Positions 36,559 through 58,603 of a DNA stretch of 64,000 nt are shown here, piece by piece. The position numbers and the translations under genes were made by a program. The DNA is from Phaeosaccion multiseriatum (lineage: Eukaryota > Protista > Ochrophyta, other classes), in the NCBI GenBank assembly GCA_965112735.1, contig OZ218952.1, positions 2,232,001 to 2,296,000 of the forward strand. Reading direction: 5' to 3'. Every line of letters begins with the position of its first letter. Position 1 is the first letter of the stretch. The notes under the pieces were generated by a model. It worked only from the letters and a program-made list of their open reading frames with translations, searched no databases and had not been told where the DNA came from.

Positions 36559-41232
<4,674 letters not shown>

Positions 41233-41584: not shown

Positions 41585-43057
41585 TCATCGAGACGAACCC
41601 CCCTCCCGCACAATGCCAAAGTCCGCGGCCCGCTGCCAGAGCTTCTCCTTCTCCTCGTCCGCGCCGCTCCTTTCGCACATGCTCTGCAGCACCCAAAACG
41701 TCGCTTCATCGGGTCGGAGGTTGTCTGCCTTCATCGCTTCGACCAGCCCGAGAGCAAGCGAGACGTTGTCGTTGCACGCACCGAACAGAGCGCCGTAGGT
41801 GACCATTGAGGGCTTGAGGCCCTTCTTCCGCAGGAGTTGCAACACACTGAGAGCCTTCCTCGTCTCTTTCGCCTTGCCGAGCGCGGAAATGAGCGAGGTG
41901 TACACCACAAGGTTGGGCTCCAGCCCCGCAGCCACGATGTCTCGAACAACGTCGATGGCAGCCTGATAATCATTACCTCGGATGTACACGTCCATGAGCG
42001 TGTTGTAAGTGACAATATCGGCCTTGATACGGTCCACCTGCATTTGCTTGGCCACATCCATCGCCAGCTCGACGTTGTTCGTCTTTCCGCAGGTGTCAAG
42101 CAGTACATTATACGTAGATAGCGTGGGTTGGAGACCTTCCGCTCGCATCTGAGCTAACAATTTTACGGCCTCCTCGGAGGCGGACGGGCCGTCGTCCGAT
42201 GTGCCACATATCTTGATCAATGAGGTGAAAGTCAGTGCATCCGGCACCACCCCTTGCTCCCTCATTTCCCCAAGCAGAGCCAAGGCCTTTCTGTACTCGT
42301 TGGTTTGGCCGTACGCCACAATCAGGCCATTGAAAGTCCTAGCCGTTGGTCGCAGACCATCCTTCTGCATCGCCATCAATACCTGGCGCCCCTTCTCTGG
42401 CTCGCTGGCCTTTCCCAGTGCGTCGATGACCGCGGAGTACGTCACAACGTTAGGTGCTGGTCCATGCTTCTTCATATCAGAGAGCAGCATCACGGCCTGT
42501 CTCCATTGGCCAGCTCGCCCAAAGGCAGTGACGGCAGCGCTGCAGCAAATCACGTCCGGCCGAACCCCCCGCACTTTAGCCTCGTCAATAGCTTCCTTCA
42601 CTCCTTGCCAATCTCCTTCCCGGTCCAGCCCCTGAATCTCTCTCAGCAGCTTGATTTGAGCGCTTTTGTCACTATTGAGCGGTGAGGTCCTCCTGGGCCC
42701 GAAGTCATCAAGCCCCCCCCCTCCTCCACCGCCTGCAAACAGCGGTCTCGTGGCCCTCCGCCGCCGACCTGGTGCAGGAATCACTCCTCCTAGAGTGGTT
42801 TGTTGTCGATTTGAGGGCCTGGCCATGCTTCCCCTACTGCGATTGGTGTGGCTCCTTTGTGTGCCACTCATGGCATCAGCCAAGGTCGACTCCATGAGAG
42901 CGCTCCTTGGTGTAAAGCCATCACTCCCCCTGCAGCATAAGCCAAGTAGCGCTATCGCTACTGCGGCACTCTTCCCTGTGGTACACCCCACATGATTCCC
43001 TTCAATAGGCCTTCGTCCACTAAATCGCTCTGCCCTCGCTTGAGCTGAGCCTCTCAT
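41585..43057 (-). CDS. Pentatricopeptide repeat (PPR) protein with bipartite-type presequence, intronless
   Basis: About 9 repeats of ~35 aa (PNVVTYSAVIDALGKA, PTARTFNGLIVAYGQ, ADIVTYNTLMDVY, PNLVVYTSLISALGK). Leader AVAIALLGLCCRGSDG-FTP. First plausible ATG 43057; the ORF extends to 43237. Confidence 0.9.
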   Translation of the reverse strand: MRGSAQARAERFSGRRPIEGNHVGCTTGKSAAVAIALLGLCCRGSDGFTPRSALMESTLADAMSGTQRSHTNRSRGSMARPSNRQQTTLGGVIPAPGRRRRATRPLFAGGGGGGGLDDFGPRRTSPLNSDKSAQIKLLREIQGLDREGDWQGVKEAIDEAKVRGVRPDVICCSAAVTAFGRAGQWRQAVMLLSDMKKHGPAPNVVTYSAVIDALGKASEPEKGRQVLMAMQKDGLRPTARTFNGLIVAYGQTNEYRKALALLGEMREQGVVPDALTFTSLIKICGTSDDGPSASEEAVKLLAQMRAEGLQPTLSTYNVLLDTCGKTNNVELAMDVAKQMQVDRIKADIVTYNTLMDVYIRGNDYQAAIDVVRDIVAAGLEPNLVVYTSLISALGKAKETRKALSVLQLLRKKGLKPSMVTYGALFGACNDNVSLALGLVEAMKADNLRPDEATFWVLQSMCERSGADEEKEKLWQRAADFGIVREGGSSR

Positions 43058-43249
43058 TATTAATTGGTTTGGGTTGATATCTGGCTTTCTTTCAGCTGAG
43101 ATATAAAAAACAATTCCAATCCAGGTGTGATTTCCCCATGGAGAACCAACACACTCACAAAACCCACACCGCTTATATCCCAGCTGTTGTATCTCTCGTG
43201 GGGCGCTACTCACCGGCAAGACCACTTCATTCATCACAACAGAGGATCA

Positions 43250-46200
43250 ATGGCGGATATGGACGCGGGAAAGCTGGTGGACTTCATCGACTTTCTCAAT
43301 GAAGCGTGCACCGGGTACCATGCAGTGGAGGCAGCTCGACAGCGGCTGTTGAAGGCTGGCTTCAAGGAGCTGCAGGAGGAGGAGCCTTTCAGCGGGGCGG
43401 TCAAGGTTAGTTGCCTTTGGTCTGCGGTCGACGCTGTGCTGCGTCTTTGAGGGAAGAATGATGCTGCTTTCGCTCGGGGAACGCATGCCTGTCGCTAGAT
43501 CGGCTCGCATGTTCTCGGTATTCGCTCTCTCTTGGCCACACTCTTTTTTTCGCCTTCTTCTGACTCTTAGCCCCTCTCTGAGCCCTGGTCCCTATCGTCC
43601 CGTCCCTGCATCCTCTGTTTCTTTTCTTCCCTCCCTGGTGGACCCACGTGACTGCACTTGCTCTGCCATCCTGGCCGACCTGCTCGCTCTGTCCCCATAT
43701 TTCCCGCTTTACCCTCGACGACGCATGCTCCTGTCCAGGCTGAAGGAAAGTACTTCTATACCCGGAACATGACGGCACTCATCGCTTTTACCGTTGGGGG
43801 GGGGTACAAGAAAGGGAACGGCTTCGTGATTACAGGGGCGCACACTGACAGGTAGACGTAGGACGGCCTTGACTCAATCAAGATGAATCGACCACCTCTT
43901 ACTGTCTTCTCGTCACCCTCCACCCCTGCCTCCAACCCCTCCTCCTCCTGCTCCGCTCCTCCGGCGCAAAGCCCCTGCCCTAAGCTGAAGCCCGTGTCCA
44001 AGAGCGGAAAGGGTGGTTTTGTTCAGGTGGCCACACAGCCGTACGGAGGGGGCTTGTGGCACACTTGGTTCGACAGAGACCTCACAGTGGCGGGGAGGGC
44101 AATCGTCAAGAGGGAGGGCGGCTTCAGGTGGGTCGCAATGGCTATGGCTATCCAATTCTCCAACTCTCCTCTCTCCCACTTCCTTCTCCCCCAGCGACCC
44201 CCCCCCCTCTCTCTCTTGCCTTTTGTTTTCGAGCGCGACGCGACAAACGATAGTGGGGGGTAGGGCTAGTCGTCTAGATAGAGAGGGAGATGGTCTGGGT
44301 TTTTATCTTTGCAGTGGCCTTGATACTACATATATGAATATGTCCGACGCCATGAAACATATGCACTCATCCCCTTCTTTCCGCGTACAACTGACTCCGA
44401 ACGACTTGACTCCCTCCCTCCCTCCCTCCCTCCCTCCCTCCCTCCCCACTCCCCTCCCCCGGCTCGCCCTGCTCTACCCCCCAGCCAAGAGCTGGTGCGG
44501 GTGGACCGCCCCATCCTGCGCATCTCCACACTGGCCATCCATCTCACCTCTGCTGAGGAGCGGAAGGCCTTCGCCCCCAACCTGCACAGCAACTGCTACC
44601 CCGTGCTAGCCACTGAGGCCAAGGCACTGCTCGACAAGCCCGTCCCCGCAGCAGGGGCAGGGGCAGGGGCGCAGGCCGGAAGTGGGGAGGACGAGAAGAA
44701 GGTATAGGGTAGGATAGGTTGGATGGATGGATGGATGGATGGATGGATGGATGGATGAATGGATGGATGGATGGATGGATGGATGGATGAATGGATGGAT
44801 AGATGGATGGATGGATGGATGGATGGATGGATGGAGGGATAGATGGATGGATGGATAGATGGGTGGATGGATGGATAGATGGATGGATGGCTGGAAAGAT
44901 GGATGGATGGATGGATGGATGGCTGGATGGATGGATAGATGGGTGGATGGGTGGATGGATGGATGGATAGATGGGTGGATGGATGGATGAATGGATGGAT
45001 GGATGGATAGATGGATGGATGGATAGATGGATGGATGGATGGATGGATGGATGGATAAATGGGTGGATGGATGGATGGATGGATGGATGGATGGATGGAT
45101 GGATGGATGGATGGATGGATGGATGGATGGGATGGATGGATGGATGGATGAATGAATGGATGGATGGATGGATGGATGGATCCATGGATCGATGGATGGA
45201 TGGATGGATGGATGGATGGAAAGATGGATGGATGGATAGATAGATGGATGGATAGATAGATGGGTCGGGCATGAAGTTCTGACCGCCTTTGCCTTGACAG
45301 GCCCTTGTCTTTGCCCTCCTCCGACCGTCTTGATGAAGAGATGTTACCCATGACTGCGCCCCCTCCCCTTTTCCGCCCACCCTCCTTCCTGCCTCCTTGC
45401 CTCTCCTCTCCCCTCCTCTCGCTGCCCCCTCCTCTCCTCTCCCCTCCCCCCTCGCCCCTCACCCAGGAGAAGCATCACGCCCTTCTACTAAAGGTGCTCA
45501 GCGACGAGCTGTCCTGCGCCCCCGAGGACATTCAGGACTTCGAGCTGCAGGTACGGGGATGGCACTGGATGGGTAGGGCACGGCAAGACGGGGATGGCAA
45601 TGGATCGCGGTGGCTCCCGAACCCCTCTGACCTGTGGTACTATTGCTGCCCTCTGCTGTACATAGCTCTGCGACACGCAGCCGAGTGCCATTGGAGGAGC
45701 CTGCTCGGAGTTCGTGATGAGTGGCCGACTCGACAACCTCTGCAGCTCCTGGCAGGCCACCACTGCCCTCATCGACTCATGCGACTCCCTGGCTGAAGGT
45801 CAGTTGGCTTGGACTTGCTTGAGTGCTGATTCGTTGGGTTGGGTAGTTGGGCTCAGGTTGGATTGGGTTGGATTGCGTTGGGTAGGAAGGATTGGGCCAA
45901 CGCAACTATTGGTTACAGGTTGGAACGGTCTGTTCGTCTGTTCCTCTTGCATCAAATCCAGCCATTCCATTTTTCTTCTTCCCATTCCCGTGTTCCTTTT
46001 GCCACGCCTTTCTTCCTCCGCTTCGTCGCTCTCCCACCCTGCTCTTCTGCTCCTCAACCCCTCCTGCAGTCATACCCCTTGGAGTGTAATCTGTTGCTCT
46101 CTGATTATTCCTGGTTCTCCCCTTCCCCTTTCGCCGCACCCACACCCACACCCACACCCACACCCGTGCCCGCCTTCGCGCCCACCCCCCTTGCTTTCCA

Positions 46201-47968
46201 CTCCACCTTCCGATCTTCTCGATGCCCCCCCCTCCCTTCCCTTCCTGCACCTGCAATATCCCCCGGACTCCCCGAATGAATGTCATGCTTTATACAGAGC
46301 CCAACGTCCGAATGGTGGCCCTGTTTGACCACGAAGAGGTGGGATCGACATCTGCGCACGGAGCAGGCAGCTCTCTCATCCCGGAGGCTCTGCGAAGAAT
46401 CGCTAAGGCCCTGGTGCTGGAGAGCGAGGCAGGGGTGGATGAGGACAGCACAGCTGCTGTCATGAGGAACTCCTTCCTCATCTCGGCAGGTGTGTTCATA
46501 CGTGGAACGGGAAGGATTTGACGCCAGACGAGGGAGAAAAGAAAGGGAAGGGGTGGAAGGACGGAGGGAGGGAGGGGGGGGTGTTCCGTCCTCTTTATTT
46601 AAACATGTGCGTGTGCACTGCTGTGAAGGGCCCGGTGCTGCATGTGTTGACTTCGCCGGGGGGAGTGGGGGTCCTTCACATGGGGAACGGAACCCTTCTT
46701 TCTTCTTTCCTTCTGCTCCCCGCGGTTAGATCCCGAGTAGCATCATCATCATCATCATCATCTCATCATCATAATAATCATTCATCCATTCCATCGCCTT
46801 CGGTCGATGCTTACGGCATTGCGCAAGAAGCCACCGCTGAGGCCAAGCTCCCATGACCATGGGCACACCCTGCCCCTCATCCCTGTGCCTACCCCAACGC
46901 GCTTCTTTCAGCTTGGCGCGATATACAGCCTCTGTTCACTTCGCCACTAAGGAGCGTTACTGCTATCCCTCCCTCTCTCTTCTCTTCATTCCTTCCTTCC
47001 TTCCTTCCTTTCTTCCTTCCTTCCTTCCTTCCTTCCCTCCTTCGTACCTTCCCTCCCTCCCCTCCCTCCCCCCTTTTAGACATGGCCCACGCCGCGCACC
47101 CCAACTACTTGGACAAGCACGACCCTGCCCTGAGCCCCAAGATGCATGCGGGCATGGTCATCAAGCATAACGCCAACCAGCGCTACGCGACCAACTCCGT
47201 CACTGCCTTCCTCTTCAGGGAGTGCGGCGCCAGGGCGGGCCTTCCATCGCAGGTATCGTAGCACTGGAGGGTGCAGTAAGAACTACAAGGATGTCTCCAC
47301 ATGGATGTCCTGATTACCACCTGTCTATTGCCTGACACAAAGTCCAGTGGGTCGGGGGGGCCAACTGAAGCTGGGGTGTGAACTTTTTGTTTTTTTGGGC
47401 TCGGGTCGGAGTGCGGGTTCGCGCTGTAGTCTCTAGACGAACGATCATCTTCGCCATTTTTTCTCGGGGCTTTTATATCAAACAGCGTCCCCTCTCTCTC
47501 GTGGGACAAGCCACTCACCCACTTCTCGAGCTTGTTCTGCCTGCCACGCGGTGGTGGTTGAGAGGAGGGGAAGAGAAGCCCCTCTTCTCACATCCATTTT
47601 ATGGACTACGCGCCCGTTCCCATCTCACTCTGGCTATATATCTACGTCTTTTTGCATGTTGTCGTATCTCCCTTTTGGTCCCCCCATCCCTCCCTCCACC
47701 CCCCCCCCCCTTCCCCCACGCGCACCCACATACGCACAAGCAGGAGTTCGCAGTTCGCTCGGACATGGGCTGCGGCAGCACCATCGGGCCCATGCTGTCC
47801 TGTCTGTCGGGCATCCGCACCGTGGACGTGGGGTCCCCGCAGCTGTCCATGCACAGCATCAGGGAGGTGATGGCTACGGACGATGCCATTTACGGCTACA
47901 AGCACATCAAGGCCTGCTTCGAGCACTTCGCTCAGCTGGATGCAGAGCTTAGCAAGGGCAAGTTGTAA
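43250..47968 (+). CDS. DNPEP: Aspartyl aminopeptidase (peptidase M18)
   Basis: [20 protein letters not shown]|[90 protein letters not shown]. Confidence 0.95.
44717..45262. repeat. ~550-bp (GGAT)n microsatellite in a DNPEP intron
   Basis: Directly visible. Confidence 0.95.
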
Positions 47969-48111
47969 TACGCAAGTGGCTTTTGCCTGTGAGAAGCCCC
48001 TCCCTCCCTCCCTCCGTCCGTCCTCTACCGTCGAGTGCCTTACTGAGCGCAACCAGCCTGACTTGATGCGGCTTTGACGTGGAAGGAATAAAATATTCAG
48101 GAATAAAACCT

Positions 48112-48219
48112 TGTGGCTAAATAATGTTTCGTTGTATTCATGTGTACAAATAGGCTGTGTACAAACCACGGGGATGTGGCTAAAAAATGTTTCGTCGTAT
48201 TCATGTGTACAAACAGGCT
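48112..48219. repeat. 45-bp direct repeat pair (48112-48156 and 48175-48219, 3 mismatches) in an AT-rich island
   Basis: TGTGGCTAAA(T/A)AATGTTTCGT(T/C)GTATTCATGTGTACAAA(T/C)AGGCT occurs twice. Confidence 0.9.
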
Positions 48220-48464
48220 CCTCAGTAAGTATCGTCACACTTAACTTTTCCCCCTCCCGTGTGAATGGCTTGGCTAATATAGCTAGCCACACGCAAAAAG
48301 TTTTTAATCATTTACACCTGTCCCCCCCATGGACTTGACGTGGGGGCTATTTGGTGCCGCTAGTCTGAGAGATGAGGAGGGGTGAGTAGCCACAGCAGCA
48401 GCCTGAGGCATTCATTGTGTTACCCCCTAACCCCCACTAATGCATGTAGAATGCGTGCAAGCCA

Positions 48465-48902
48465 TCACAAGCCGTCTCTCTTTTCATCTACAGGCCCTGT
48501 TCCAGGAGCGCGATGAAACTCCACCACGAACTCCAAGTCGTCCGTCAATGGCTTGACTTGATGCAGCTGCTGCGGCACTATGATGCCTGGTGGCGCATCC
48601 GGACTGAGCTCGTATTTCCGCAATGTGGGCTCGTTGATTTGGTATTCCAAGCGCCCTTGAAAGACACGAATAACGCCCCACGTGCCCGCTTTGGTGGAAT
48701 GCTGCTTGAGTAAGCCCTTGGGTACTGTGGTGGCCGTAAAGCGCTTGTTCTTGGGCAATTGGGAGTACTGCACGACGTCTTGAGGGAGCTTGGGCATGGT
48801 CGTAAATGCCAAGAACGCACGACGCCGGACTGCAGCAACCGCGCACAGCATGGTCCCTATCAGCAGAAGGACGGATGTCGCTGCGGTGGTCTTGTTCATC
48901 AT
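48465..48902 (-). CDS. TehB/YeaR-like cupin-fold (DUF1971) protein with N-terminal hydrophobic leader, intronless
   Basis: FTATTVPKGLLKQHSTKAGTWGVIRVFQGRLEY...IIVPQQLHQVKPLTDDLEFVVEFH matches the YeaR/TehB N-terminal pattern (HxTKxGxW, PxxxHxV, F.VEF). The ORF is open upstream to 49139. Confidence 0.8.
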   Translation of the reverse strand: MMNKTTAATSVLLLIGTMLCAVAAVRRRAFLAFTTMPKLPQDVVQYSQLPKNKRFTATTVPKGLLKQHSTKAGTWGVIRVFQGRLEYQINEPTLRKYELSPDAPPGIIVPQQLHQVKPLTDDLEFVVEFHRAPGTGPVDEKRDGL

Positions 48903-49491
48903 CTCGTTCTCCTTTGGTTTAGCAGCAGACTTCTCGTGGAAAGATTCAACCCCAACGAGGATAGACGAGCATTTGTGGACAAATCGCTCGAGCCTCTTCG
49001 CGGTTCCTTGCCATAAGCTTATGGAGATAGTACTCCAGACAGTCTTTCGAATGAATAAAAGCGAAGGGAGAAGAAGGCAATATGGAGCCTCCTCGATATC
49101 CCGGGTTCTGTGAGTGTTTCCGTACCACCAGTTCGCCACTGGTCACCAAAGGAGCGAGACAAGATTAATGAAATACAACGAGCAAGCGAGGAAGAGTGCT
49201 TGTTAGCTAACTCCTCTTACAAGGTTTTTGTGGGGGCGGGATTCTCCATCTTGTGCACGCCTTCCTCACCCCCAAACGGCGAGAGCCTCTGCGAACTGAG
49301 GCCCACCTTCCGACCATAGTGGTACTGAGCAACAGCAGCAGAAGTTGGGGCGCAGCGCCCCGCGCAGGAGCGGGAAAGGCAAGCGGTCCGGGGGAATTGC
49401 GAATAGAATACCAGCCGCAGCAGGGGCAGGGGCGACAGAGGGTAGCAGGAGCAGCAGAGGGCAGTTTGGGGCAGCAGGAGCAGAGCAGACG

Positions 49492-50757
49492 ATGGTGCGT
49501 AAGCGCTGCAAAGTAGAGATGTGCTCGGAACAGGCCATCGTCGGTGATGTTTGCATCTTACATCAAACTGGCGCCGTCGCGTGTGCCGTTGATGGATGTG
49601 GCAAGCCGGCCAGAGTCAAAGGGGTCTGCTTTATTCACGAAACCTCTAGCAGCAGTTGGGCGGTCGCGGCGGCGATGGCTCCTTTGAAAACAGAAGGAAT
49701 GGCGAGTACATCTGCTTCTACTGCTGGCGGATATGCAGCCTCAGCTGCTGCCCTAAATGCTAAGAAATCTCCGAACAGAAAGAAGGCGAAACCGGAAGGG
49801 AGCGCAGCACCGGCAGCAGCAGCAGGGGTATCGGCCCGCTCTGCCTCAGCCGCAGCCGGAGCAAAGGCAACCCCGGCCAAGCTGAAAGCCAAGAAGGAGG
49901 TGGCGTGTAAGAAGCCCAAGTGTAAGGAGGATGCCTTGGTCGGGGGACAATGCAGTGACCACCGCGCTCCTACGCGGTGCGGCTTGAAGAACTGCCGAAA
50001 GGTTGCCACGGTCATCAAGCCGGACGGAGTCGCGTTCTGCACGCAGCACAATGCCATCGCAGAGACGTGTAGCCTTCCTGACTGCACCAATCGCCAGCAG
50101 AAGCAGCAGAGAGATGGCTTGTGCGTTTCTCATGCGCGCGTGTCCAACTCTGCTGGTGGTGGTGGTGGGAGTAGCGGGAAGAAGCCTACACCATCTGCGC
50201 AACAGAAGAAGACGAAGCAAGTCAAGCCGTTGTGTAGTGTGGACGGGTGCATCAAGTACGCGCAGTCAGGGAAGATGGGAATGTGTTGCGCTCACGCTCG
50301 GGAGTACGGGGTTGGGGCGCAGACGGGAGCGGCCGCCGCAGCAGCACCACGAGCCGCACGAGCAGCAGCGTCAGCAGCATCCACAGCAGCATCATCGAGT
50401 GGGAAGGCAGAAGGGGGCTCTGCATCGAAGAAGAAGAGGGGTTTAGAGTCGGAGGAAGACGAGTGTTTGCCCCATCCAGCACCCGCGGCGGCGAGAAAGA
50501 GGGCCCGCAAGGCCCCGCCAAAGACCACAGCCAAGACCAAGGGCACGGGCAAAGGCAAGGCCCAAGCGCAGCCCGCAGCCAAGAAGTGGAGGAGCAGAGA
50601 GGCAGTGGCGGAGAGGAAGCGGAAGAAGCAGCGAGGAGGAACAGGAGGAGGAGGAGGAGGAGGAGGAGGAGGAGGGGGGGCAGCCGCCGACACAGGCCAG
50701 GAGGGAGAGAAGCTCGGGCCACTGCAGCGGCTGGGACGCTGGCTAAACATTTGGTGA
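49492..50757 (+). CDS. Second WRKY19-like zinc-finger repeat protein with basic tail, intronless
   Basis: Six divergent C-x4-C-x9..14-C-x2-H units (e.g. CAVDGCGKPARVKGVCFIH, CSVDGCIKYAQSGKMGMCCAH) and K/R-rich NLS-like stretches. Confidence 0.75.
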   Translation: MVRKRCKVEMCSEQAIVGDVCILHQTGAVACAVDGCGKPARVKGVCFIHETSSSSWAVAAAMAPLKTEGMASTSASTAGGYAASAAALNAKKSPNRKKAKPEGSAAPAAAAGVSARSASAAAGAKATPAKLKAKKEVACKKPKCKEDALVGGQCSDHRAPTRCGLKNCRKVATVIKPDGVAFCTQHNAIAETCSLPDCTNRQQKQQRDGLCVSHARVSNSAGGGGGSSGKKPTPSAQQKKTKQVKPLCSVDGCIKYAQSGKMGMCCAHAREYGVGAQTGAAAAAAPRAARAAASAASTAASSSGKAEGGSASKKKRGLESEEDECLPHPAPAAARKRARKAPPKTTAKTKGTGKGKAQAQPAAKKWRSREAVAERKRKKQRGGTGGGGGGGGGGGGAAADTGQEGEKLGPLQRLGRWLNIW

Positions 50758-51147
50758 TTTGGAGAGAATGGAAAGCAAAGCGAGTGGAGTGCGGCAGACT
50801 AGGAGTGGGGGGGGAGAGAGATAGAAGGACGAGAAGATGGTGTGCTGGAGGACACACAAGGGGGGATGCGTATGTTGTGATTGCAGAATTAGAATTGAAA
50901 CTTAAACTTGGCTGACGGGTGGGTCTCCTCTGGGGTGGGGGGGGGAGTAGTAGTATGTATGTGTGTGTGTGAATGTATGTTAGGGGGAGAAGGGAATCTC
51001 AAGTGCACTGGAAGGGGGATTCAAAAGAATGAAGTGGACGCGGACCAAGGGGGGGGGGGATGTTTTTTTCTCCTCCCCTTCCCGAGCACCCTGAGCTAGT
51101 TAATGAATTCAAGAGTGGATGGAAGCAATGATGGTGTCAAGCAATTG

Positions 51148-51165
51148 CTTTAATTAAAATTAATT
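51148..51165. promoter_or_regulatory. AT-rich 18-mer CTTTAATTAAAATTAATT, candidate 3'-end signal (copy 2)
   Basis: Identical copy at 36509-36526. Confidence 0.35.
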
Positions 51166-52184
51166 GTAATCAAGAAATACGAATATCGAAAAAGGGAGGG
51201 CCGAACGGAACACCAATTATTGGGAGTGTGTGTGGCTGTGTGTGGGTAGATGGACGTGTGTCTCGAGCATCTTTCGTCAAGGCAGAGATCGCACTCCGTT
51301 CCCCGGCCCTCAATCCCCCGTACAGAGCAAGACATGATGGGCAAGATGCTCTGGGGCCTGCTGGGGGGAGGGAGGAGCTCACTTTCAGTTTCGGGATATT
51401 GGACCGACCTCTGGCCAATGGCTGGGGCTGGGGCACGTGGCCCGAAAAGGGGCGGCCCAAACATTGGTTTATGGCGCCGTTGTCCATCTGCCCTCCCCCC
51501 GACGGGTCAGATCGCAAAGCTGGCGACTGAGGACGAGAGACTATTTGGAAGGGAAGGGCTGAGAATGGACAAACCCTCAGGCAGGGGGGAAGGCACGGCA
51601 GAGCTTATACGGGCCGTGTACAGCAGCAGCGAGGTCCTGGTGTGTAGGGGTGTACGAGAGCCTAGGAGAGGGGGAGCGTAGAGAGCGGATTCGCTCTGCA
51701 CTGCCATGAAGAAGTGTAGGTGGTGGCTGTGGAGGACGAGCGAGCCATCCAGCAAACAGAAAAAAATGTAAATCTCAAATCTCGTCCCCCAAATCAAATG
51801 CGTTCTGCACTTGCGCATTCTTCGCGCCTGGCGTGTCTGCCAGTCGCGATTAATCGCTTTGACTCCTCCTACCTCCCCCACCCTTCCGCCTCCCCCCCCC
51901 CGCCAACCCGTAAGGAGGGTAGCCAACGTGCCTTCTCGCTGTGCCTTCTCAGCCCCCCCGCCCCCTCAGATTTCCTTGCTGTTGCCCCGCGCGGACATGC
52001 TCCTGCTCCTGCTCGTCCTCCTCCCCCTCCTCCTCCTCCTCCTCCTCCTCCTCCTCCTCCTCCTCCTGCTCCTCCTCCTCCTCCTCCTCCTCCACCACCA
52101 CCTCCTCCTCCTCCTCCTCCTGCTGCTGCTGCTCCTGCTGCTGCTGCTGCACCTTCTGACAGGACAGGACACCTCCCCTCCTCT

Positions 52185-55100
52185 CTACTCCTCCTGTTCC
52201 CCCTTCATTTTATGGCGGAGGAAGGCCTCAACGAAGAGGTCGATGTCACCGTCCAGCACATCCTGCACTCGGGTGGTTTCCGCCTCCATCCTCACGTCTT
52301 TGATTGACTTGTACGGATGCAGCACGTAGTTGCGGATCTGCTGACCCCACGACGCCTGTGTTCACGTTGCGCAGCAAAGCGGAAAGGGGGGAGGGTAGTT
52401 AGGCCGAGCAGCGCCGCACGCATCCACGCACGCAGGCAACACACGCAGGGTAAGCTAACCGCAGTGTGTGAGACAAGAGACCGAGACAGGAGGCAGAGGT
52501 GGAGACAGAGAGAGACCGGTCGATGGAGGCGGAGATGGGACGCAAAGTCACGGCTCCGTCATGAGGGGTTCCGGAGCCGTGACAGTGTGAGAGAGAGTGA
52601 GGTGATCAAAGCCAGAGGTAAAGCAGAGGTAAAGCAGAATGAGTGTGCCCTCCCTCCTTCCCTCCCTCGCTCCCTCCCTCCCTCCCTCCCTCCCTCCCTC
52701 CCTCCCTCCCTCACCTCGACCATGTCCCCTCTGATCTCAGCGATGTCCTTGGCCTGTTGCTCCTGCATTACCACAAGGAGCCGTTCCTTCACCATGTTCA
52801 GGGCCAGGGCCTTGTTCAGGAGCTGGCTCCTCTGCTGCGTGCATCGCACAGAAATGCCTTCAGTGGAAGAGGGAGGGAGGGAGGAGGAGGAGGAGGAGGA
52901 GGAGGAGGAGGAGGAGGATGGAGGAGGAGGAGATGAACACGCAGGCGGCAAAAGGAGGGTACCACACAACAACACACAAGCAGGGGGGTGAGGTCGAGGG
53001 GTGAAAGAAGCCCTACAAGAGAAAGGTCAAGCGGGACTCGACAGGAAGGGCGATGCGACACAAAGTCGGCACGCACAACGCGAAAGGAGGGGACAGTAGA
53101 TTGCGACAGATGTACGTAAGCCAATGAACGCAAGTCAATGATCCAAGCCCATATACCTGGACCTATATAGTACCTACCCGTGGGTATGTGCGTCATGCGC
53201 ACGCCAGTCTCCACCTTGTTGACGTTCTGTCCGCCGGACCCGCCAGACCGCATCGTCGATATCTCGAGGTCAGAGTCGGGAATATCGACATCGCTGGTTC
53301 ATGGAGAGGAGGGAAGGAGGGAGGGAGGGAGGGAGGGAGGGAGCACACCGAGGGGAGTCGCGGCAAGATGGCCCCCAGCCCAGGTATATGTATGTACACA
53401 CAATACACACACACATGCACGGCGGTAAGGAGAGAAGGAGTGGTGAGTGCTCTGATGTCGGACCGTAGGACAGAACGGTTTGGGGAATCTTCTCCTCCTT
53501 GCGCCATCGTTCATTCCGCAAAGAAGGGCCACGCAGGGTAAGCTGGGCAAGCGGTAGGAAGCGAAGCCCCTCCCTCCCTCGCTCCCTCTGCTACCCGCTC
53601 GTTTGGTAGGTGCCGGGTCCGATCCAATTCACGTCCAAGTTCACATTCAATTCCACGATGTAAATTCGTCTACTGTATATGTCAATTTGTTCTCACCCCA
53701 CCCACCTTAACTCCTGCTCGTCCAAGATGGGGAAGGTCTCCACACCTGCGAAGCTCGTCTGCCGCTTGCTCATCGAGTTGAAGGGGCTGATTCGGACCAG
53801 CCTGTGCGTGCCCTTCTCCCCCGAGAGCAGCCCAAAGGCAAAGTCTCCGGTGATCTCCATAGCGCAGCTCTTGATGCCCGCCTCCTGCCCCTTCTCCTCC
53901 TCGATGAGCTTGCACTTCAGGCCCTTTCTCTGGCAGTACCTGTCCAGCCGGAGGGCGGAGGTACGGGGGGGGGAGAAGGCGTGAGGGGGTGGGTTGGGCG
54001 GGGGGAGTGGCACATAACGAAAGCGCCGGGGCAAGGGCGACATGGTTCTTGCATATCCAACATGGAGACCAGTCTGTATGTCTGCCTGTCTGTCCAGCCT
54101 CCCTCCGTCCCTCCCTCCCTCCCCTTCCCCTCTTCCTCCCACGCCCTCTCCTTACCTCTTGTACATGCGCTGCAGCATCTCTGCCCAGTCCTGCGCATCC
54201 GTGCCCCCTGCCCCCCCCGTGATGGTCATTCGGCAGCCGCTGTTATCATAGGCGCCACCCAGGAGCTTCTCCAGCTCCCAAGCATCGAGATCGGCAGAGA
54301 GATGCTCCAGCGCCTCTGTGGCCTCTGTGTAGCGGGGTATGGGGTAGGGTGGGGTGATTGGTTGGGGCCTTGGGCAGACAGGCACAGAGAGAGAGAGACT
54401 AGCAAAGACAGACTTAGCTTACCCTCGACCATCATTTGCTCTTCTTCTGCCTCCAAGCCTCCGTCCTCCGCCAGCAGCTCCAGCACTGTAGTGGCGTCGC
54501 TTCTCCACCGCTCCCACTGCACGAGGCGATCCACCTGCCTCTTGACTACATTGAGCTGGTCAAGGACCGTCTTGGCAGCCGCTGGGTCATCCCAGAACGT
54601 GGGCTCGCCCGACACGCCCTCCAAATACTCGAGCTCCGCCCGTAGCTTGACGTCATCGAGCACACCTGCATTCTTCTCCAGTTTTGCCTCCGTCGTCTCC
54701 AGCATACTTCGCACACTCAGGGCGGTGGTGGGCAAGGCGAGCTGCTGCTGCTGCTGCTCCTTCGCGGAAGCCATGAGAGAAGTACGCCCATGATTGGTCT
54801 CTGCTTCCCCTTGACAACAACCCCAGCCCCTCCGTCGCCGACCTGGTGCAAGAGTGAATCGACTTATGCTGCTCCTCCTGCTGTTGGTTTGGCTCCTTTG
54901 CGTGCCACTCATGGCGTGAGACAAGGTTGACTCCATCAGAGTGCTCATCGGTGCAAAGCCCTGACTGACCGTGGAGCATACGCCAAGCAGTGCAATCGCT
55001 ATTGCCGTACTCTTCCCTGTAGTACACCCTACATGCCCTTCGAGAGGCCTTCGTCCACCAAAGCGCTCTGCCCTCGCTGTTGGTGCTGCCGCTGCTGCTG

Positions 55101-55185
55101 CTCCGGCGGCGTGGACTGATGCGCCTGAGGTTCCAGGGGTGCGGCAAGCTTGGGCAGATTCTCTCCTTCTTCGCTTCGTCAACAT
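52185..55185 (-). CDS. prfB: Organellar (probably plastid) peptide chain release factor 2
   Basis: [41 protein letters not shown] (SPF anticodon of RF2), [33 protein letters not shown] (GGQ), [18 protein letters not shown]. Stop at 52185-52187. Start is 55185 or 55299. Confidence 0.93.
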
Positions 55186-55491
55186 GTTTAACACAGCAGC
55201 TAAGGCGAATCCCGAAGTGAAGGGGGAGTGCAGGATGCCGATCTGTGAGTCCCTGGAGGTCCAACACGTCAACAAGAATGTTACCGGCTCGTCGATCATC
55301 CGCGCCAGTCTGCAAAAACAAAACGTTTTGCTCTCTTCCCTCAGGGCAGGGGTTAGTTGGGCTTGATGCCTCGACCTCCAGTTGAGTGATGCGACCCTAC
55401 TCGAGGTTTGAAGGGCTCCATAGAGGCTTCTGAGTGCAACAACAAAAACGGAGGAAGGGCGAGAGAAAATTGAGACCCGTTCTCAATCAAG

Positions 55492-56219
55492 ATGTCGCAG
55501 CACAGCAGCAGTAGCGGGGGGAATGGGAGTCATTCAGGGAGGCGCTCGTCGACGGCAGCCAAGGTGGAAAGCATTCTTGCCTTCCTGGACAAAGTCCAAA
55601 CAACAAACTCCTCGTCTTCTGAGGAGTACCATGGGCACGAGCACCAACGACTGACGCCGCCGCACTCTCCCCTTTCCAGCCCTAGCAAGGCTTCTACCAC
55701 GTCGAGCCCGTTTGCAAATCTGCAGCAGCGAGGCGCATCTCCTGGAGGACAGGACGCAAGGTCGAGTAGCAGCTCATCATCCGCAGGAGGTAGGCGCCGA
55801 AGGAGGGGCGAAGGCGTGCAGCAGCAACTTCACCGGGAAGAAAGACAGAACAATGATGACCACAGTCTATCCTATTCGATGAGCACCTCTCAAACGAATG
55901 GGAGCCGGGGAGGAGGCAAGAGTGCCTCCGGAACGTCGACAGTAGGAATCCTGGAGCACAACAGCACCAGTGGCACTAGAAGCAACGTGTCCATCGAGAA
56001 GCATCGTCCGAGACGAAAGTGGGTGTGGGATGATTGGGACGACGATGAAGTGGTAGCTGCAAGTAGCGCTGTTGGGGAGGCGCAGCACCAGCAGCCTCCC
56101 CCCACATGGGGACGGGACGACAGAGACAAAGGCGATGCAATGGTCGAGGAGCAGCTTCGCCAGTACAATAGCCAAAGGGCGCCCTCCTCTGACGGCGACT
56201 ACCACCAGAGAGGTCGTTC

Positions 56220-56253
<34 letters not shown>

Positions 56254-58603
56254 GAGGAGGAGGAGGAGGGTGATGACAGCCGTTCGTACTTTGGCGGAGG
56301 GGGGGAGGGGCCTCCTCGACCGAATGACGGATCTGGGGCCCCACGGGGCGGGAGAGACCCGTACGGGGATGGAGATGTCAGTGTGGTATCCTCCGTCACA
56401 GCCGCCACGTATTCAGTGGTGGCGGCAGAGGATATAGCGGCCAAGGTGAGTGTGTCTGTTGCGTTTCGTTTGTCACAAGGAGGAGGGGGGGAGAGAAGGC
56501 GAGGGCTGGACAGAAGTAATCGTGCATATGCGTGTACGTAAGAGAAGAAGATAGAAGAATGTGCCCTTTTTTTAACACCTCCTCCTCCTGCTCCTCCTCC
56601 TCCTCCTTTCGCAGATTTCATCAATGAAGGCAGAGCTGAGAGGGCGCAAGGACGAGGTAAGGTAGTGGAATCGAAAGCGAATCGAATCGAAACGTTGCCG
56701 TTAGCATAACAAATTTCCTGCCCATCTGTGCATCCGGCTTCTACACGCGGCGCGCACCCCTCCCCCCGTCCTCCTTTCTTCTTCCCATCCCCTATATCCC
56801 ATTCCCCTGGCCTCTGCTGTTCGGTCTCTTGCCTCTGATTACGCCTGTCTCTCTGTCTCTGCCTCTTGCCCTCTCTCTGCTCTGTGCTCCTCGCCGTGCA
56901 GGTGATTGAGCTCAAGACCGCCCTGGCGAGGTTGCGCGCCTCCAACGCGCGGCGGAGAGAGCGTCTCGCAGCCAAGTGGGCAGCCAAGCAGGAGCAAGTC
57001 AAGGAGCAGCGCAAGAGCGCCATAGACAGGTGAGTCACTATCTTTGGGTTGGCTGCTTGGTTGGTTGGCTTGGTTGGTTGGTTGATTGGGTGGGTGGTAG
57101 GTTGGTTGGTTGGTTGGTTGATTGGTTGATTGGTTGATTGGGTGGTTGGTTGGTTGCTCCTTCTCGTTTCCTCTAGGGAACGAGTACCAGAGATTCGAGA
57201 CGAGAAGTGTGATGATCTTCGCCAAAGTGTAACGACTTGTCTATGTTCCTCCTATTCCCGCCCCTGCAGGCAGCGAAAGTTCACCGCCGAGGTGGAGGCA
57301 GATGTGGAGGCTCTAAGCAAGAGAAGCGATGAGCTCGAGCGACAAGTACTCAAGGTGTGTGCGTGCGTGCGTGCGCCACTCGGGACCCACTCGTCACAAG
57401 AGAAGCCGTGGTGGAAGGGGGCTTTGCTATAAGCCACCTACCTACCCTACCTAGACGGACTGGCTACCCGCCTACCCGCCCGCCTGCCTGTCTGACTGAG
57501 ACTGTCTGACTGCCTGATGTACGCCTTGGTGACGGCTGCTGCTGCTGCATGTACCAGGCTACTTCTCAAAGACATATTCACCCCCCCCCCTTCCTTCCCA
57601 CTTCGCCCCCTCTCCCTTTCTTCCCCGGTCCAGTTGCGCACGGGTCGACAGCGTGACCTTGACTTGTCCCGCCTCAAATGTGCCAAGGAGCTCAAGAAGG
57701 CAAGGGAAGCTTGGGCAGCGACCGAGAGGAGCAAGCTAGAGAGGCTGGCCAGTCAGAAGATGGGTGCTATCAAGCAGGTACAGAGAGAGAGAGAGGTTGA
57801 GAGTAGAGGGGATGGGAAGGAGAGAGGGTGAGGGAGACAGAGAGGTGAGGGGGAGGGGGGGAGGGGGAGACAACAAGCGAGCGAGCGAGAGAGAGAGAGA
57901 GGGAGGGGGAGGGAGGGAGGGAGGGAGAAGGAGAGCGAGTGCGAGAGGGAGAGGGAGGCGGGGGGGCAGAGAGAGGAAGGATGGACATTGGGGTGGAGGG
58001 GATCTGAATCGGGGGCGGTGGCTGAAGGCAAGGCAGAGCAATACTGTGCTACAACTTTAACTCCCCTCGTCGCACACGCGCAAACATACGTATGCACGCA
58101 CAGGGGGCCATCAAGGCACTGGAGCCGGAGCTGGCCATGCTCGTGAGTGACAACAGAAAGGCCCTGGCGCAGGCCAAAGAGCAGGGCAGGGAGGAGATGA
58201 AGCAGCTTGCCCTCGCCTTGGAGAGGGAGGTGGAGAACCACGTCAATGCAGAGACCATCAAGATGTGAGTGAGGGAGAGAGGGAGGGAGGATGGAGTGAA
58301 AGGAGCGAAGGGGGGGCTGTGCTTTAGCAAGTGTTCCCTTTACTATTCTCTGCTTCCCTTACGTGGCTGCTGCTGCTCTCTTTCTCTCTCCCTCTCCCTC
58401 TCCCTCTCCCTCTCTCTCTCTCTGCGGTACTGTGCGGGCAGCCAAGCCGAGATGGATGCTCAGGTGGCCGCGGCCAAGAGAGAGATCGCTCACGCTCAGA
58501 GGCTCACCACCAGAGAAGGTTTGATGTGGGGGGACAGGGAGCCACAGACTCGCTGACTCGCTGCTGCGACTCAGTCTCTCTCTCGCTCGCTCACACGCAC
58601 CTC

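What the first reader, a model, noticed from the sequence alone, without database searches (positions are those of the whole stretch)
42754..55078. One targeting presequence duplicated onto two unrelated organelle gene-expression genes (PPR and RF2)
Seen: 42754-43040 (PPR 5' region) and 54828-55078 (prfB 5' region) are homologous, same orientation, 12 kb apart, roughly 80% identical by eye. They translate as [63 protein letters not shown]...PAPGRRRR versus [62 protein letters not shown]...LAPGRRRR. Indels (3 and 33 nt) keep the frame, many substitutions are synonymous, and homology stops before the mature domains. Known: a hydrophobic helix, G/A-F-x-P cleavage motif and S/T/R-rich transit peptide is the ASAFAP-type bipartite signal of complex red plastids. 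Inference: a visible case of presequence recruitment by local duplication, or a reusable targeting cassette. Caveat: the hydrophobic core is unusually far from the ATG (about 27 and 55 aa).
Basis: partly seen in the sequence, partly recalled or inferred. Interest (0 to 1): 0.75.

Follow-up and report, generated by a model that had tools for sequence, protein, structure and literature searches.

The report
Two genes share one copied address tag
In this golden-brown alga, a PPR RNA-binding protein and release factor RF2, two unrelated organelle proteins encoded 12 kb apart, begin with copies of the same roughly 90-codon organelle address tag, which is a clear new example of a known way for genes to acquire such tags.

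Summary
Window 42755-43039 and 54829-55077 (minus strand) are homologous: 82% nucleotide and 72% amino-acid identity. The only indels are 3 and 33 nt. These are the only two copies in the 67-Mb genome.

Both copies lie in frame between an ATG and the mature part of an unrelated gene. One is a single-exon PPR protein. The other is a six-exon RF2 with SPF and GGQ motifs. Substitutions favour third codon positions (15/7/24). dN/dS is 0.37 (P about 0.004), and 0.36 for the part upstream of the first conserved internal Met. Only this frame is open in both copies. So the segment is most likely translated.

It encodes a hydrophobic core, a small-residue G|F-x-P junction and a basic, Ser/Thr-rich tail. 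That is the layout of ochrophyte bipartite plastid signals, which this genome uses in textbook form elsewhere. This RF2 is the plastid one by elimination among the genome's four organellar release factors.

Some points stay open or fail:
- The hydrophobic core starts 31 and 59 residues from the ATG, unlike the reference signals.
- No transcript, orthologue or localisation data could be obtained.
- Donor and recipient are unresolved.
- A "reusable cassette" is not supported, since there are only two copies.

Earlier notes of this scan report two more neighbour-gene leader duplications elsewhere in this genome. I did not test them.

The parts
42755..43039 (-). Copy A of the shared presequence segment (95 codons), residues 7-101 of the PPR precursor
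54829..55077 (-). Copy B of the shared presequence segment (83 codons), residues 37-119 of the RF2 precursor counted from ATG 55185
41585..43057 (-). PPR gene: single uninterrupted ORF of 490 codons plus stop, from ATG 43057 (A at -3). An in-frame upstream ATG at 43234 lies only about 17 nt from the divergent M18 peptidase start and is unlikely to be used.
42932..42964 (-). Hydrophobic core of copy A (residues 32-42; Kyte-Doolittle 11-residue mean 2.74). It is followed by the G|F-T-P junction, with Phe at residue 48 (42914-42916).
54976..55008 (-). Hydrophobic core of copy B (residues 60-70; Kyte-Doolittle mean 2.51). It is followed by the G|F-A-P junction, with Phe at residue 77 (54955-54957).
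54442..55185 (-). RF2 exon 1 from ATG 55185 (A at -3; a further in-frame ATG lies at 55299) to a canonical GTAAG donor. The match to the prfB profile begins at about residue 163.
54155..54322 (-). RF2 exon 2, conserved part (prfB profile positions 91-144); ends at a GTAAGG donor
53708..53938 (-). RF2 exon 3, carrying the SPF stop-codon recognition motif (prfB E 6e-29 against prfA 4e-10)
53176..53253 (-). RF2 exon carrying the GGQ peptidyl-tRNA hydrolysis motif (conserved part only; splice sites not mapped)
52712..52855 (-). RF2 exon, conserved part (prfB profile positions 260-305)
52188..52283 (-). RF2 C-terminal exon, conserved part, ending at the stop codon of the ORF that ends at 52185

Best explanation
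A stretch of about 250-290 bp of coding DNA for an N-terminal organelle-targeting presequence was copied between two unrelated genes that lie 12 kb apart in the same orientation. Both genes now start with it. One is a P-type PPR protein. The other is the alga's plastid-type release factor RF2. The shared piece encodes four things in order: a basic N-terminal stretch; a signal-peptide-like hydrophobic core; a signal-peptidase-type junction with small residues at -3/-1 and Phe at +1 (G|F-T/A-P); and a basic, Ser/Thr-rich transit-peptide-like tail ending in four arginines. Each gene then continues with 30-45 residues of its own before the mature domain.

Inferred mechanism: the hydrophobic core engages SRP and Sec61 as it emerges, although it is not at the very N-terminus. 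Cleavage exposes the Phe, and the tail carries the protein across the inner plastid membranes. One address tag would then deliver an RNA-binding factor and a UGA-reading termination factor to the plastid gene-expression system.

Shown here: the duplication, its restriction to two copies, its reading frame, and the purifying selection on it. Inferred: translation from the upstream ATGs, the plastid destination, and the copying mechanism. For the mechanism I favour a short templated or ectopic repair copy, because no flanking DNA is shared and neither copy's end is separated from its mature domain by an intron. RF2 as donor is only a weak guess. It rests on two points: a plastid RF2 must always have had such a signal, while the PPR belongs to a large family whose sampled members carry mitochondrial-type N-termini.
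For: The duplication is real and unique to these two places. No other homology links the two 13-kb neighbourhoods.

Evidence that it is coding:
- Both indels are multiples of 3.
- Only the sense frame is free of stops in both copies.
- Differences by codon position are 15/7/24. Nei-Gojobori counts are Sd 20 and Nd 26, with dS 0.42, dN 0.15 and omega 0.37.
- Placing the same substitutions at random gives a stop in 47% of trials. Among stop-free trials it reaches the observed synonymous count in 0.4%.
- The part upstream of the first conserved internal Met (N-stretch, core and junction) on its own has omega 0.36, P about 0.013-0.017.
- Both ORFs run without a stop from an ATG with A at -3, through the repeat, into the Pfam/NCBIfam-supported mature domains.

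Evidence for signal architecture:
- Kyte-Doolittle core means of 2.74 and 2.51 exceed those of the FCP (1.94) and pRF1 (1.44) leaders of the same genome.
- Ser at -3 and Gly at -1, with Phe at +1, in both copies.
- The 60 residues after the Phe have K+R/D+E/S+T of 11/2/14 and 9/3/17.
- The genome uses the ASAFAP-type signal: FCP ...CASA|FVAP, pRF1 ...ATA|FMP, and another ORF ...GLG|FAP.

Plastid assignment of this RF2 by elimination. The genome has four PCRF-domain genes, matching the canonical organellar set mtRF1a, mtRF2a, pRF1 and pRF2 (PMC3472500). One RF1 has a classic signal plus A|F. The other RF1-like gene and the second RF2 have Arg-rich N-termini without a hydrophobic core.

Precedent: presequences copied from other genes in plants (PMC2631504, citing PMC452489), and a proposed case in the diatom T. 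oceanica (PMC3022921).
Against: - The hydrophobic core begins 31 (PPR) and 59 (RF2) residues after the nearest in-frame ATG. The three reference plastid leaders of this genome place it at residues 3-4.
- There is no in-frame ATG between the upstream ATG and the core in either copy.
- No signal-peptide or ASAFind-type predictor was available, and there is no transcript, TSS or proteomic evidence (blank).
- The tail has two acidic residues within 10 residues of the Phe.
- With only two sequences, the omega test has modest power. Its null model ignores context-dependent mutation.
- No orthologue or outgroup was found, so selection in each lineage separately, and the direction of transfer, cannot be shown.
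- The plastid assignment of RF2 rests on elimination and N-terminal features, not on a phylogeny.
Confidence: 0.65

Rival explanations
1. The shared leader is an ambiguous or multi-start signal that sends both proteins to the mitochondrion, or to both mitochondrion and plastid. The Arg-rich stretch before the hydrophobic core would act as a mitochondrial presequence. Alternatively, translation from the two conserved in-frame Met codons just after the G|F junction would give a shorter isoform without a signal peptide. This resembles the arrangement of diatom dual-targeted aminoacyl-tRNA synthetases.
For: The stretch before the core is basic: K+R/D+E is 6/2 in PPR and 11/3 in RF2. It has the lowest omega of the three sub-regions, 0.18, though on only 8 substitutions. 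Two in-frame Met codons after the junction are conserved in both copies. The seven sampled PPR paralogues have mitochondrial-type N-termini. In diatoms, dual plastid/mitochondrion targeting uses a signal peptide from the first Met and a presequence from the next Met, or an ambiguous peptide (PMC4494062).
Against: The genome already has a separate RF2 with a mitochondrial-type N-terminus, so a second mitochondrial RF2 is not needed. The peptide that would start at the conserved Met has Glu at position 2 and Asp/His at position 7, which is poor for a mitochondrial presequence. Nothing was tested experimentally.
Confidence: 0.2
2. The shared segment is not translated in one or both genes. It would be 5' UTR or promoter-proximal DNA copied along with a start region, and the real proteins would start at downstream Met codons.
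For: No transcript evidence could be obtained. Downstream in-frame Met codons exist, including one between the repeat and the mature RF2. The long N-terminal stretch is odd for a signal peptide.
Against: Omega is 0.37, and 0.36 for the upstream part alone. Indels keep the frame, differences are richest at third positions, and only this frame is open in both copies. An RF2 starting after the repeat would have no targeting information, although bacterial-type RF2 works only in organelles (PMC3472500). The intergenic space to the divergent neighbours is only about 190-300 bp.
Confidence: 0.1
3. The segment is a fragment of a dispersed repeat or mobile element that happens to lie at two gene starts, or it is a chance similarity.
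For: The surrounding DNA is rich in simple repeats.
Against: There are only two copies in 67 Mb by blastn and tblastn, with partner E 1e-55. There are no terminal repeats and no shared flanks. No Pfam hit appears even at E 10.
Confidence: 0.02

Closest known systems
Presequence acquisition by duplication of an existing targeting signal in plant mitochondrial genes (rice rps11-1 from atp2, Arabidopsis sdh3 from hsp70, carrot rps10 from hsp22; summarised in PMC2631504, original PMC452489)
   Same: Sequence similarity between unrelated nuclear genes is confined to the N-terminal targeting extension. One gene's leader is reused by another.
   Different: Here the signal is a bipartite (ER signal plus transit peptide-like) leader of a complex red-type plastid. 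The two genes are neighbours 12 kb apart. No recent organelle-to-nucleus transfer is involved. No intron separates the leader from the mature part in either gene.
Proposed exon-shuffled plastid leader of nuclear PETF in the diatom Thalassiosira oceanica (PMC3022921), and the intron-linked presequence acquisition of Kilian and Kroth 2004 (cited in PMC12136025)
   Same: A heterokont alga in which the plastid-targeting module of one gene is proposed to derive from another plastid-protein gene by duplication.
   Different: In T. oceanica the leader is a separate exon and the donor (LI818) is only suggested. Here the homology is unambiguous (82% over about 250 nt), but both leaders are continuous with the mature coding sequence, so classical intron-mediated exon shuffling is not evident.
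ASAFAP-type bipartite topogenic signal of ochrophyte plastid proteins (Kilian and Kroth 2005, cited in PMC3022921; ASAFind 2.0, PMC12136025)
   Same: Hydrophobic core, small residues at -3/-1, Phe at +1, then a basic hydroxylated region. The same genome's FCP, pRF1 and another ORF show the canonical form.
   Different: The core is preceded by 31 or 59 residues rather than 2-5, and that stretch is as well conserved between the copies as the rest.
Dual plastid/mitochondrion leaders of diatom and cryptophyte aminoacyl-tRNA synthetases (PMC4494062)
   Same: Organelle gene-expression proteins; a signal-peptide-bearing leader with in-frame Met codons downstream of the signal peptide.
   Different: In those proteins the signal peptide starts at the first Met. 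Here a basic extension precedes it, and a dedicated mitochondrial-type RF2 exists in the genome.

Membership tests
Ochrophyte bipartite plastid-targeting signal (ASAFAP type) | N-terminal ER signal peptide (short n-region, hydrophobic core, cleavage site obeying the -3/-1 rule) | tested here: inconclusive
   A core is present (KD 2.74 and 2.51) with Ser at -3 and Gly at -1. But it starts at residue 32 or 60, against 3-4 in three reference leaders of this genome. No SignalP-type predictor was available.
Ochrophyte bipartite plastid-targeting signal (ASAFAP type) | Aromatic residue (usually Phe) at +1 of the signal-peptide cleavage site | tested here: met
   G|F-T-P in the PPR copy and G|F-A-P in the RF2 copy, conserved in the alignment.
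Ochrophyte bipartite plastid-targeting signal (ASAFAP type) | Transit-peptide-like region: net positive, rich in Ser/Thr, poor in acidic residues | tested here: met
   In the 60 residues after Phe, K+R/D+E/S+T is 11/2/14 (PPR) and 9/3/17 (RF2).
Ochrophyte bipartite plastid-targeting signal (ASAFAP type) | Delivers a passenger protein into the plastid | not testable with these tools
   Needs GFP fusions or organelle proteomics.
Presequence acquired by duplication of another gene's targeting signal | Significant similarity between otherwise unrelated genes, limited to the N-terminal extension | tested here: met
   Partner blastn E 1e-55. Homology ends 30-45 codons before the PPR and prfB domains. 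Flanks are not similar.
Presequence acquired by duplication of another gene's targeting signal | Both copies translated and under constraint | tested here: met
   Omega 0.37, P about 0.004; frame-preserving indels; a single open frame. This is statistical evidence only, with no transcripts.
Presequence acquired by duplication of another gene's targeting signal | Donor and recipient identifiable from orthologues lacking or carrying the leader | tested here: inconclusive
   No relative of the leader in 1.84 billion representatives, in the word-indexed collection or in metagenome contigs.
Class I release factor RF2 (prfB), plastid form pRF2 | PCRF and RF-1 domains with SPF and GGQ motifs; prfB scores above prfA | tested here: met
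   PCRF is over its cut-off. SPF and GGQ are present. prfB is the best model for all four exon pieces. The spliced protein was not joined or searched as a whole.
Class I release factor RF2 (prfB), plastid form pRF2 | Groups with cyanobacterial/plastid RF2 rather than mtRF2a | not tested
   Assigned only by elimination among the four RF genes and their N-termini.
P-type pentatricopeptide repeat protein | Tandem 35-residue PPR motifs | tested here: met
   PPR_2 E 5e-69 in 7 stretches; PPR_3, PPR and PPR_1 all over cut-off.
Multi-gene reusable targeting cassette (as the crTP of Paulinella; from my own knowledge) | The same leader on many unrelated genes | tested here: not met
   Exactly two copies in the genome.
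Dispersed repeat / mobile-element fragment | Many copies, including non-genic ones | tested here: not met
   Two copies, both at gene starts.

The most novel reading that the evidence does not exclude
The shared leader is a three-part ambiguous tag made of a basic mitochondrial-type N-stretch, an internal signal-peptide core with a G|F junction, and a transit-peptide-like tail. It would send organelle gene-expression factors to both mitochondrion and plastid. Copying such leaders between neighbouring genes would be a recurrent route of retargeting in this alga, since two further neighbour-gene leader duplications are noted elsewhere in the genome (s1-331354, s1-342207; not tested by me).
Probability: 0.12. 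Interest if true: 0.65.

Novelty: new member of a known kind. Interest (0 to 1): 0.42.

Why it matters
How nuclear genes obtain the long two-part leaders needed to cross four plastid membranes is mostly inferred from indirect evidence. Clear donor/recipient-type pairs are known mainly for plant mitochondrial genes. Here both copies are still recognisable at the DNA level, they sit 12 kb apart, and they show protein-level constraint. That makes them a natural experiment. Fusing either leader, with or without its unusual N-terminal stretch, to GFP would test whether a signal-peptide core placed 30-60 residues into a protein still works as a plastid signal. It would also test whether one leader serves two different passengers. 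If the two other cases noted in this genome hold, local copying of leaders may be a common way for this alga to retarget proteins.

Tried and rejected
1. Dispersed repeat: rejected, since there are two copies only.

2. Larger segmental duplication. There is no other blastn or tblastx similarity between 36-49 kb and 49-62 kb, and the flanks are not significantly similar. A possible extension of homology to the PPR start codon, a four-residue match S-A-Q-A interrupted in RF2 by an Ala-rich insertion, is only suggestive (P about 0.02).

3. Relatives of the leader elsewhere, all blank:
- Word search on residues 1-105 of the PPR, on RF2 exon 1 and on the 105-residue leader alone.
- Two metagenome scans.
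- The HMMER search of 1.84 billion representatives. It gave only an ankyrin-repeat protein and a low-complexity repeat protein, whose scores come from the same 30 residues matching six to eight repeats. Pairwise score is 30 bits for copy A and E 0.09 for copy B, and there is no Pfam hit at E 10. I rejected both as chance.

4. Transcript evidence through exact-protein look-ups of three alternative PPR starts: nothing on record.

5. Origin of RF2 through genome contigs: only four uninformative bacterial loci came back, so no phylogeny was made.

7. A mini-intron or non-AUG start that would bring a start codon next to the hydrophobic core. No plausible splice pair exists. The in-frame GTG of copy A is GTA in copy B (reading).

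It was rerun from references.

9. The spliced RF2 protein was never joined.
Full report
THE OBSERVATION

The repeat finder reports three collinear direct-repeat blocks with about 12,040-nt spacing, at 85%, 82% and 89% identity. A MAFFT alignment of the minus strands joins them into one block interrupted by gaps of 3 nt and 33 nt, with sharp ends on both sides.

In the whole assembly (67.1 Mb, 22 contigs; the window is C3:2232001-2296000), blastn finds only these two places, with E 1e-55 for the partner. A six-frame protein search finds nothing else better than E 0.09. The weak hits there are unrelated leaders. One of them is a textbook plastid signal beginning at its Met and ending ...GLG|FAP. 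So this is a genuine two-copy duplication, not a dispersed repeat and not chance.

THE TWO GENES

Copy A (42755-43039, minus) lies in a single 490-codon ORF starting at ATG 43057. That ORF is a P-type PPR protein, with PPR_2 at E 5e-69.

Copy B (54829-55077, minus) lies in exon 1 of a multi-exon gene:
- Exon 1 runs from ATG 55185 to a canonical GTAAG donor at about 54441.
- Downstream exons carry the SPF and GGQ motifs.
- The PCRF domain is over its Pfam cut-off.
- Every exon piece tested scores best against the prfB (RF2) model. For the SPF exon, prfB gives 6e-29 and prfA 4e-10.
- The match to the prfB profile begins at about residue 163 of the precursor.

I never joined the exons or searched the whole protein.

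Both genes face a divergent neighbour across only 190-300 bp. These are an M18 aminopeptidase start at about 43250 and an ORF without family matches at 55492.

IS THE SHARED SEGMENT TRANSLATED?

- Both indels are multiples of three.
- Of the six frames, only the sense frame is free of stops in both copies.
- Over 83 aligned codons there are 46 differences, distributed 15/7/24 over codon positions.
- Nei-Gojobori counts are Sd 20 and Nd 26, giving dS 0.42, dN 0.15 and omega 0.37.
- I placed the same substitution types at random positions of copy A. This creates a stop codon in 47% of trials. Among stop-free trials it reaches the observed synonymous count in 0.4%.

That part has omega 0.36 and P about 0.013-0.017.

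These are two-sequence tests with a simple null model, so they give good but not overwhelming evidence. dS of 0.42 says the copy is not recent.

The ORFs run without interruption from ATGs with A at -3, through the repeat, into the mature domains. I could obtain no transcript evidence. Exact-protein look-ups for three alternative PPR starts were blank.

WHAT IT ENCODES

From N to C, the shared block holds:
- a basic stretch of about 24 residues;
- an 11-12-residue hydrophobic core, with Kyte-Doolittle 11-residue means of 2.74 and 2.51;
- a short polar stretch with Ser at -3 and Gly at -1;
- Phe-Thr/Ala-Pro;
- a basic, Ser/Thr-rich region, with K+R/D+E/S+T of 11/2/14 and 9/3/17 in the 60 residues after Phe, ending in Pro-Gly-Arg-Arg-Arg-Arg.

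The same genome uses the classical heterokont signal elsewhere:
- FCP genes begin with a 17-residue signal peptide ending CASA|FVAP.
- The plastid-type RF1 begins with a signal peptide ending ATA|FMP.
- Another ORF ends GLG|FAP.

The cores of the FCP and RF1 leaders are less hydrophobic (1.94 and 1.44) than those of the shared segment. So the segment has all the parts of a bipartite plastid signal.

The difference is position. The core starts at residue 32 (PPR) or 60 (RF2) from the nearest ATG, against residue 3-4 in the references. There is no in-frame ATG in between. From general knowledge, SRP recognises hydrophobic segments wherever they emerge, and long n-regions occur in some signal peptides and in signal anchors. 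The position therefore does not exclude ER entry, but cleavage efficiency is uncertain.

WHICH ORGANELLE?

The genome has four PCRF-domain genes. This matches the canonical organellar set of mtRF1a, mtRF2a, pRF1 and pRF2 (PMC3472500). Reading their N-termini:
- An RF1 on C6 (P-Q-T motif) has a classical signal peptide plus A|F.
- An RF1-like gene on C4 has an Arg-rich N-terminus without a hydrophobic core.
- A second RF2 on C6 also has such an N-terminus. It carries S-P-Y in place of S-P-F.

By elimination, the RF2 in this window is the plastid one. That agrees with the G|F-A-P junction. This is an argument by elimination, not a phylogeny.

The PPR belongs to a very large family here, with 192 matches at E below 1e-10. 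Its nearest paralogues are only 38-40% identical. The seven paralogues I could read have Arg-rich, mitochondrial-type N-termini without a signal-peptide core.

HOW IT AROSE

Nothing but the leader is shared between the two 13-kb neighbourhoods, and the immediate flanks are not significantly similar. A four-residue match right after the PPR start codon may extend the homology to the start, with an Ala-rich insertion in RF2, but P is only about 0.02.

In neither gene does an intron separate the leader from the mature part. So classical intron-mediated exon shuffling is not visible. I think a short ectopic copy during repair, or an old tandem duplication followed by deletions, is more likely. This is inference.

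The direction cannot be polarised. No relative of the leader exists in the 1.84-billion-protein representative library. Its two hits are repeat proteins whose scores add up over 6-8 repeats. They are not supported by pairwise scores for copy B or by Pfam. Nothing was found in the word-indexed collection or in metagenome contigs.

I weakly favour RF2 as donor. A plastid RF2 has needed such a signal since the plastid was acquired, whereas the PPR sits in an expanded family with mostly mitochondrial-looking leaders.

RIVALS

1. Ambiguous or multi-start leader for mitochondrion, or mitochondrion plus plastid (0.2).
- For: the stretch before the core is basic and has the lowest omega (0.18, on 8 substitutions).
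- For: two in-frame Met codons just after the junction are conserved in both copies.
- For: diatom dual-targeted aminoacyl-tRNA synthetases use a signal peptide from Met 1 and a presequence from the next Met, or an ambiguous peptide (PMC4494062).
- Against: the genome has its own mitochondrial-type RF2.
- Against: the peptide starting at the conserved Met has acidic residues at positions 2 and 7.

2. Untranslated in one or both genes (0.1). The selection tests argue against this. So does the fact that a leaderless bacterial-type RF2 would have no organelle to work in.

3. Dispersed repeat or chance (0.02). Refuted by copy number and E-value.

COMPARISON WITH WHAT IS KNOWN

Copying an existing leader onto another gene is an established route. 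It is best documented for plant mitochondrial genes: rps11-1/atp2, sdh3/hsp70 and rps10/hsp22 (PMC2631504, citing PMC452489). It has also been proposed for the plastid leader of nuclear PETF in the diatom T. oceanica (PMC3022921).

This case is a new, clean member of that kind. What is new is a bipartite leader, two neighbouring genes both involved in organelle gene expression, and an atypically long and conserved stretch ahead of the signal-peptide core. It is not a multi-gene cassette.

Earlier notes of this scan describe two further neighbour-gene leader duplications on other contigs of the same genome: an FAD synthetase with an IF2_N protein (s1-331354), and SHMT with a neighbour (s1-342207). 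I did not test those. If they hold, the phenomenon is recurrent in this alga.

VERDICT

The duplicated, translated, constrained targeting leader is well supported. The plastid destination is plausible but unproven. Donor and recipient are unresolved. The reusable-cassette reading is rejected. Novelty: new member of a known kind. Interest: 0.42.

Noticed in passing
G000:C6:1147000-1154000 (L020, minus strand; motif exon at about L020 2612-2788): The second RF2 gene of the genome, with a mitochondrial-type N-terminus, has Ser-Pro-Tyr where RF2 normally has the stop-codon-reading Ser-Pro-Phe motif. GGQ is intact.
   Followed up: no
whole genome; examples L047-L053: The PPR family is very large for a heterokont alga: 192 matches at E below 1e-10, mostly long intron-free ORFs and often clustered (for example C3 3.5-3.7 Mb and C7 1.29, 1.98-2.06 Mb). 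The seven paralogues read have Arg-rich N-termini without a signal-peptide core.
   Followed up: partly
window 42905-42994 (residues 22-50 of the PPR precursor): The hydrophobic core plus G-F-T-P junction of copy A resembles one ankyrin-type repeat of an uncharacterised 455-residue repeat protein (P0001; 13-15 of 31 identical). Copy B does not (E 0.09) and Pfam finds no Ank match, so this is probably chance.
   Followed up: yes
window 44620-45190: A microsatellite of about 570 bp with GGAT/GGATGGAT units (58 or more overlapping copies), flanked by CCCT-type tracts at 44389-44489. Similar CCCT/AGGG tracts recur at 46966-47088, 52637-52749 and 53301-53345, inside or next to introns of the RF2 gene.
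   Followed up: no
window 39717-40673 (minus): Immediately downstream of the PPR gene lies the first exon of a class I methionyl-tRNA synthetase. Its catalytic domain starts at residue 21 after a poly-Ser stretch, with no targeting leader in this exon.
   Followed up: no
G000:C9:474910-521083 and C15:1683723-1700707: Near-identical fucoxanthin-chlorophyll protein genes stand in tandem and inverted arrays with about 4.5-kb spacing on C9 and 3.5-kb or about 6-kb spacing on C15. All leaders read are of the same short CASA|FVAP type.
   Followed up: no
window 43232-43234 and 55297-55299 (minus): Each gene has a further in-frame ATG upstream of the start used here, 59 and 38 codons upstream. The PPR one lies only about 17 nt from the divergent M18 peptidase start codon, so it is unlikely to be within the mRNA.
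   Followed up: partly
window 55492-56541 (plus): The divergent neighbour of the RF2 gene is a 349-codon ORF with no Pfam match. It contains long CAG/GAG (Gln/Glu) runs at about 56207-56279.
   Followed up: no
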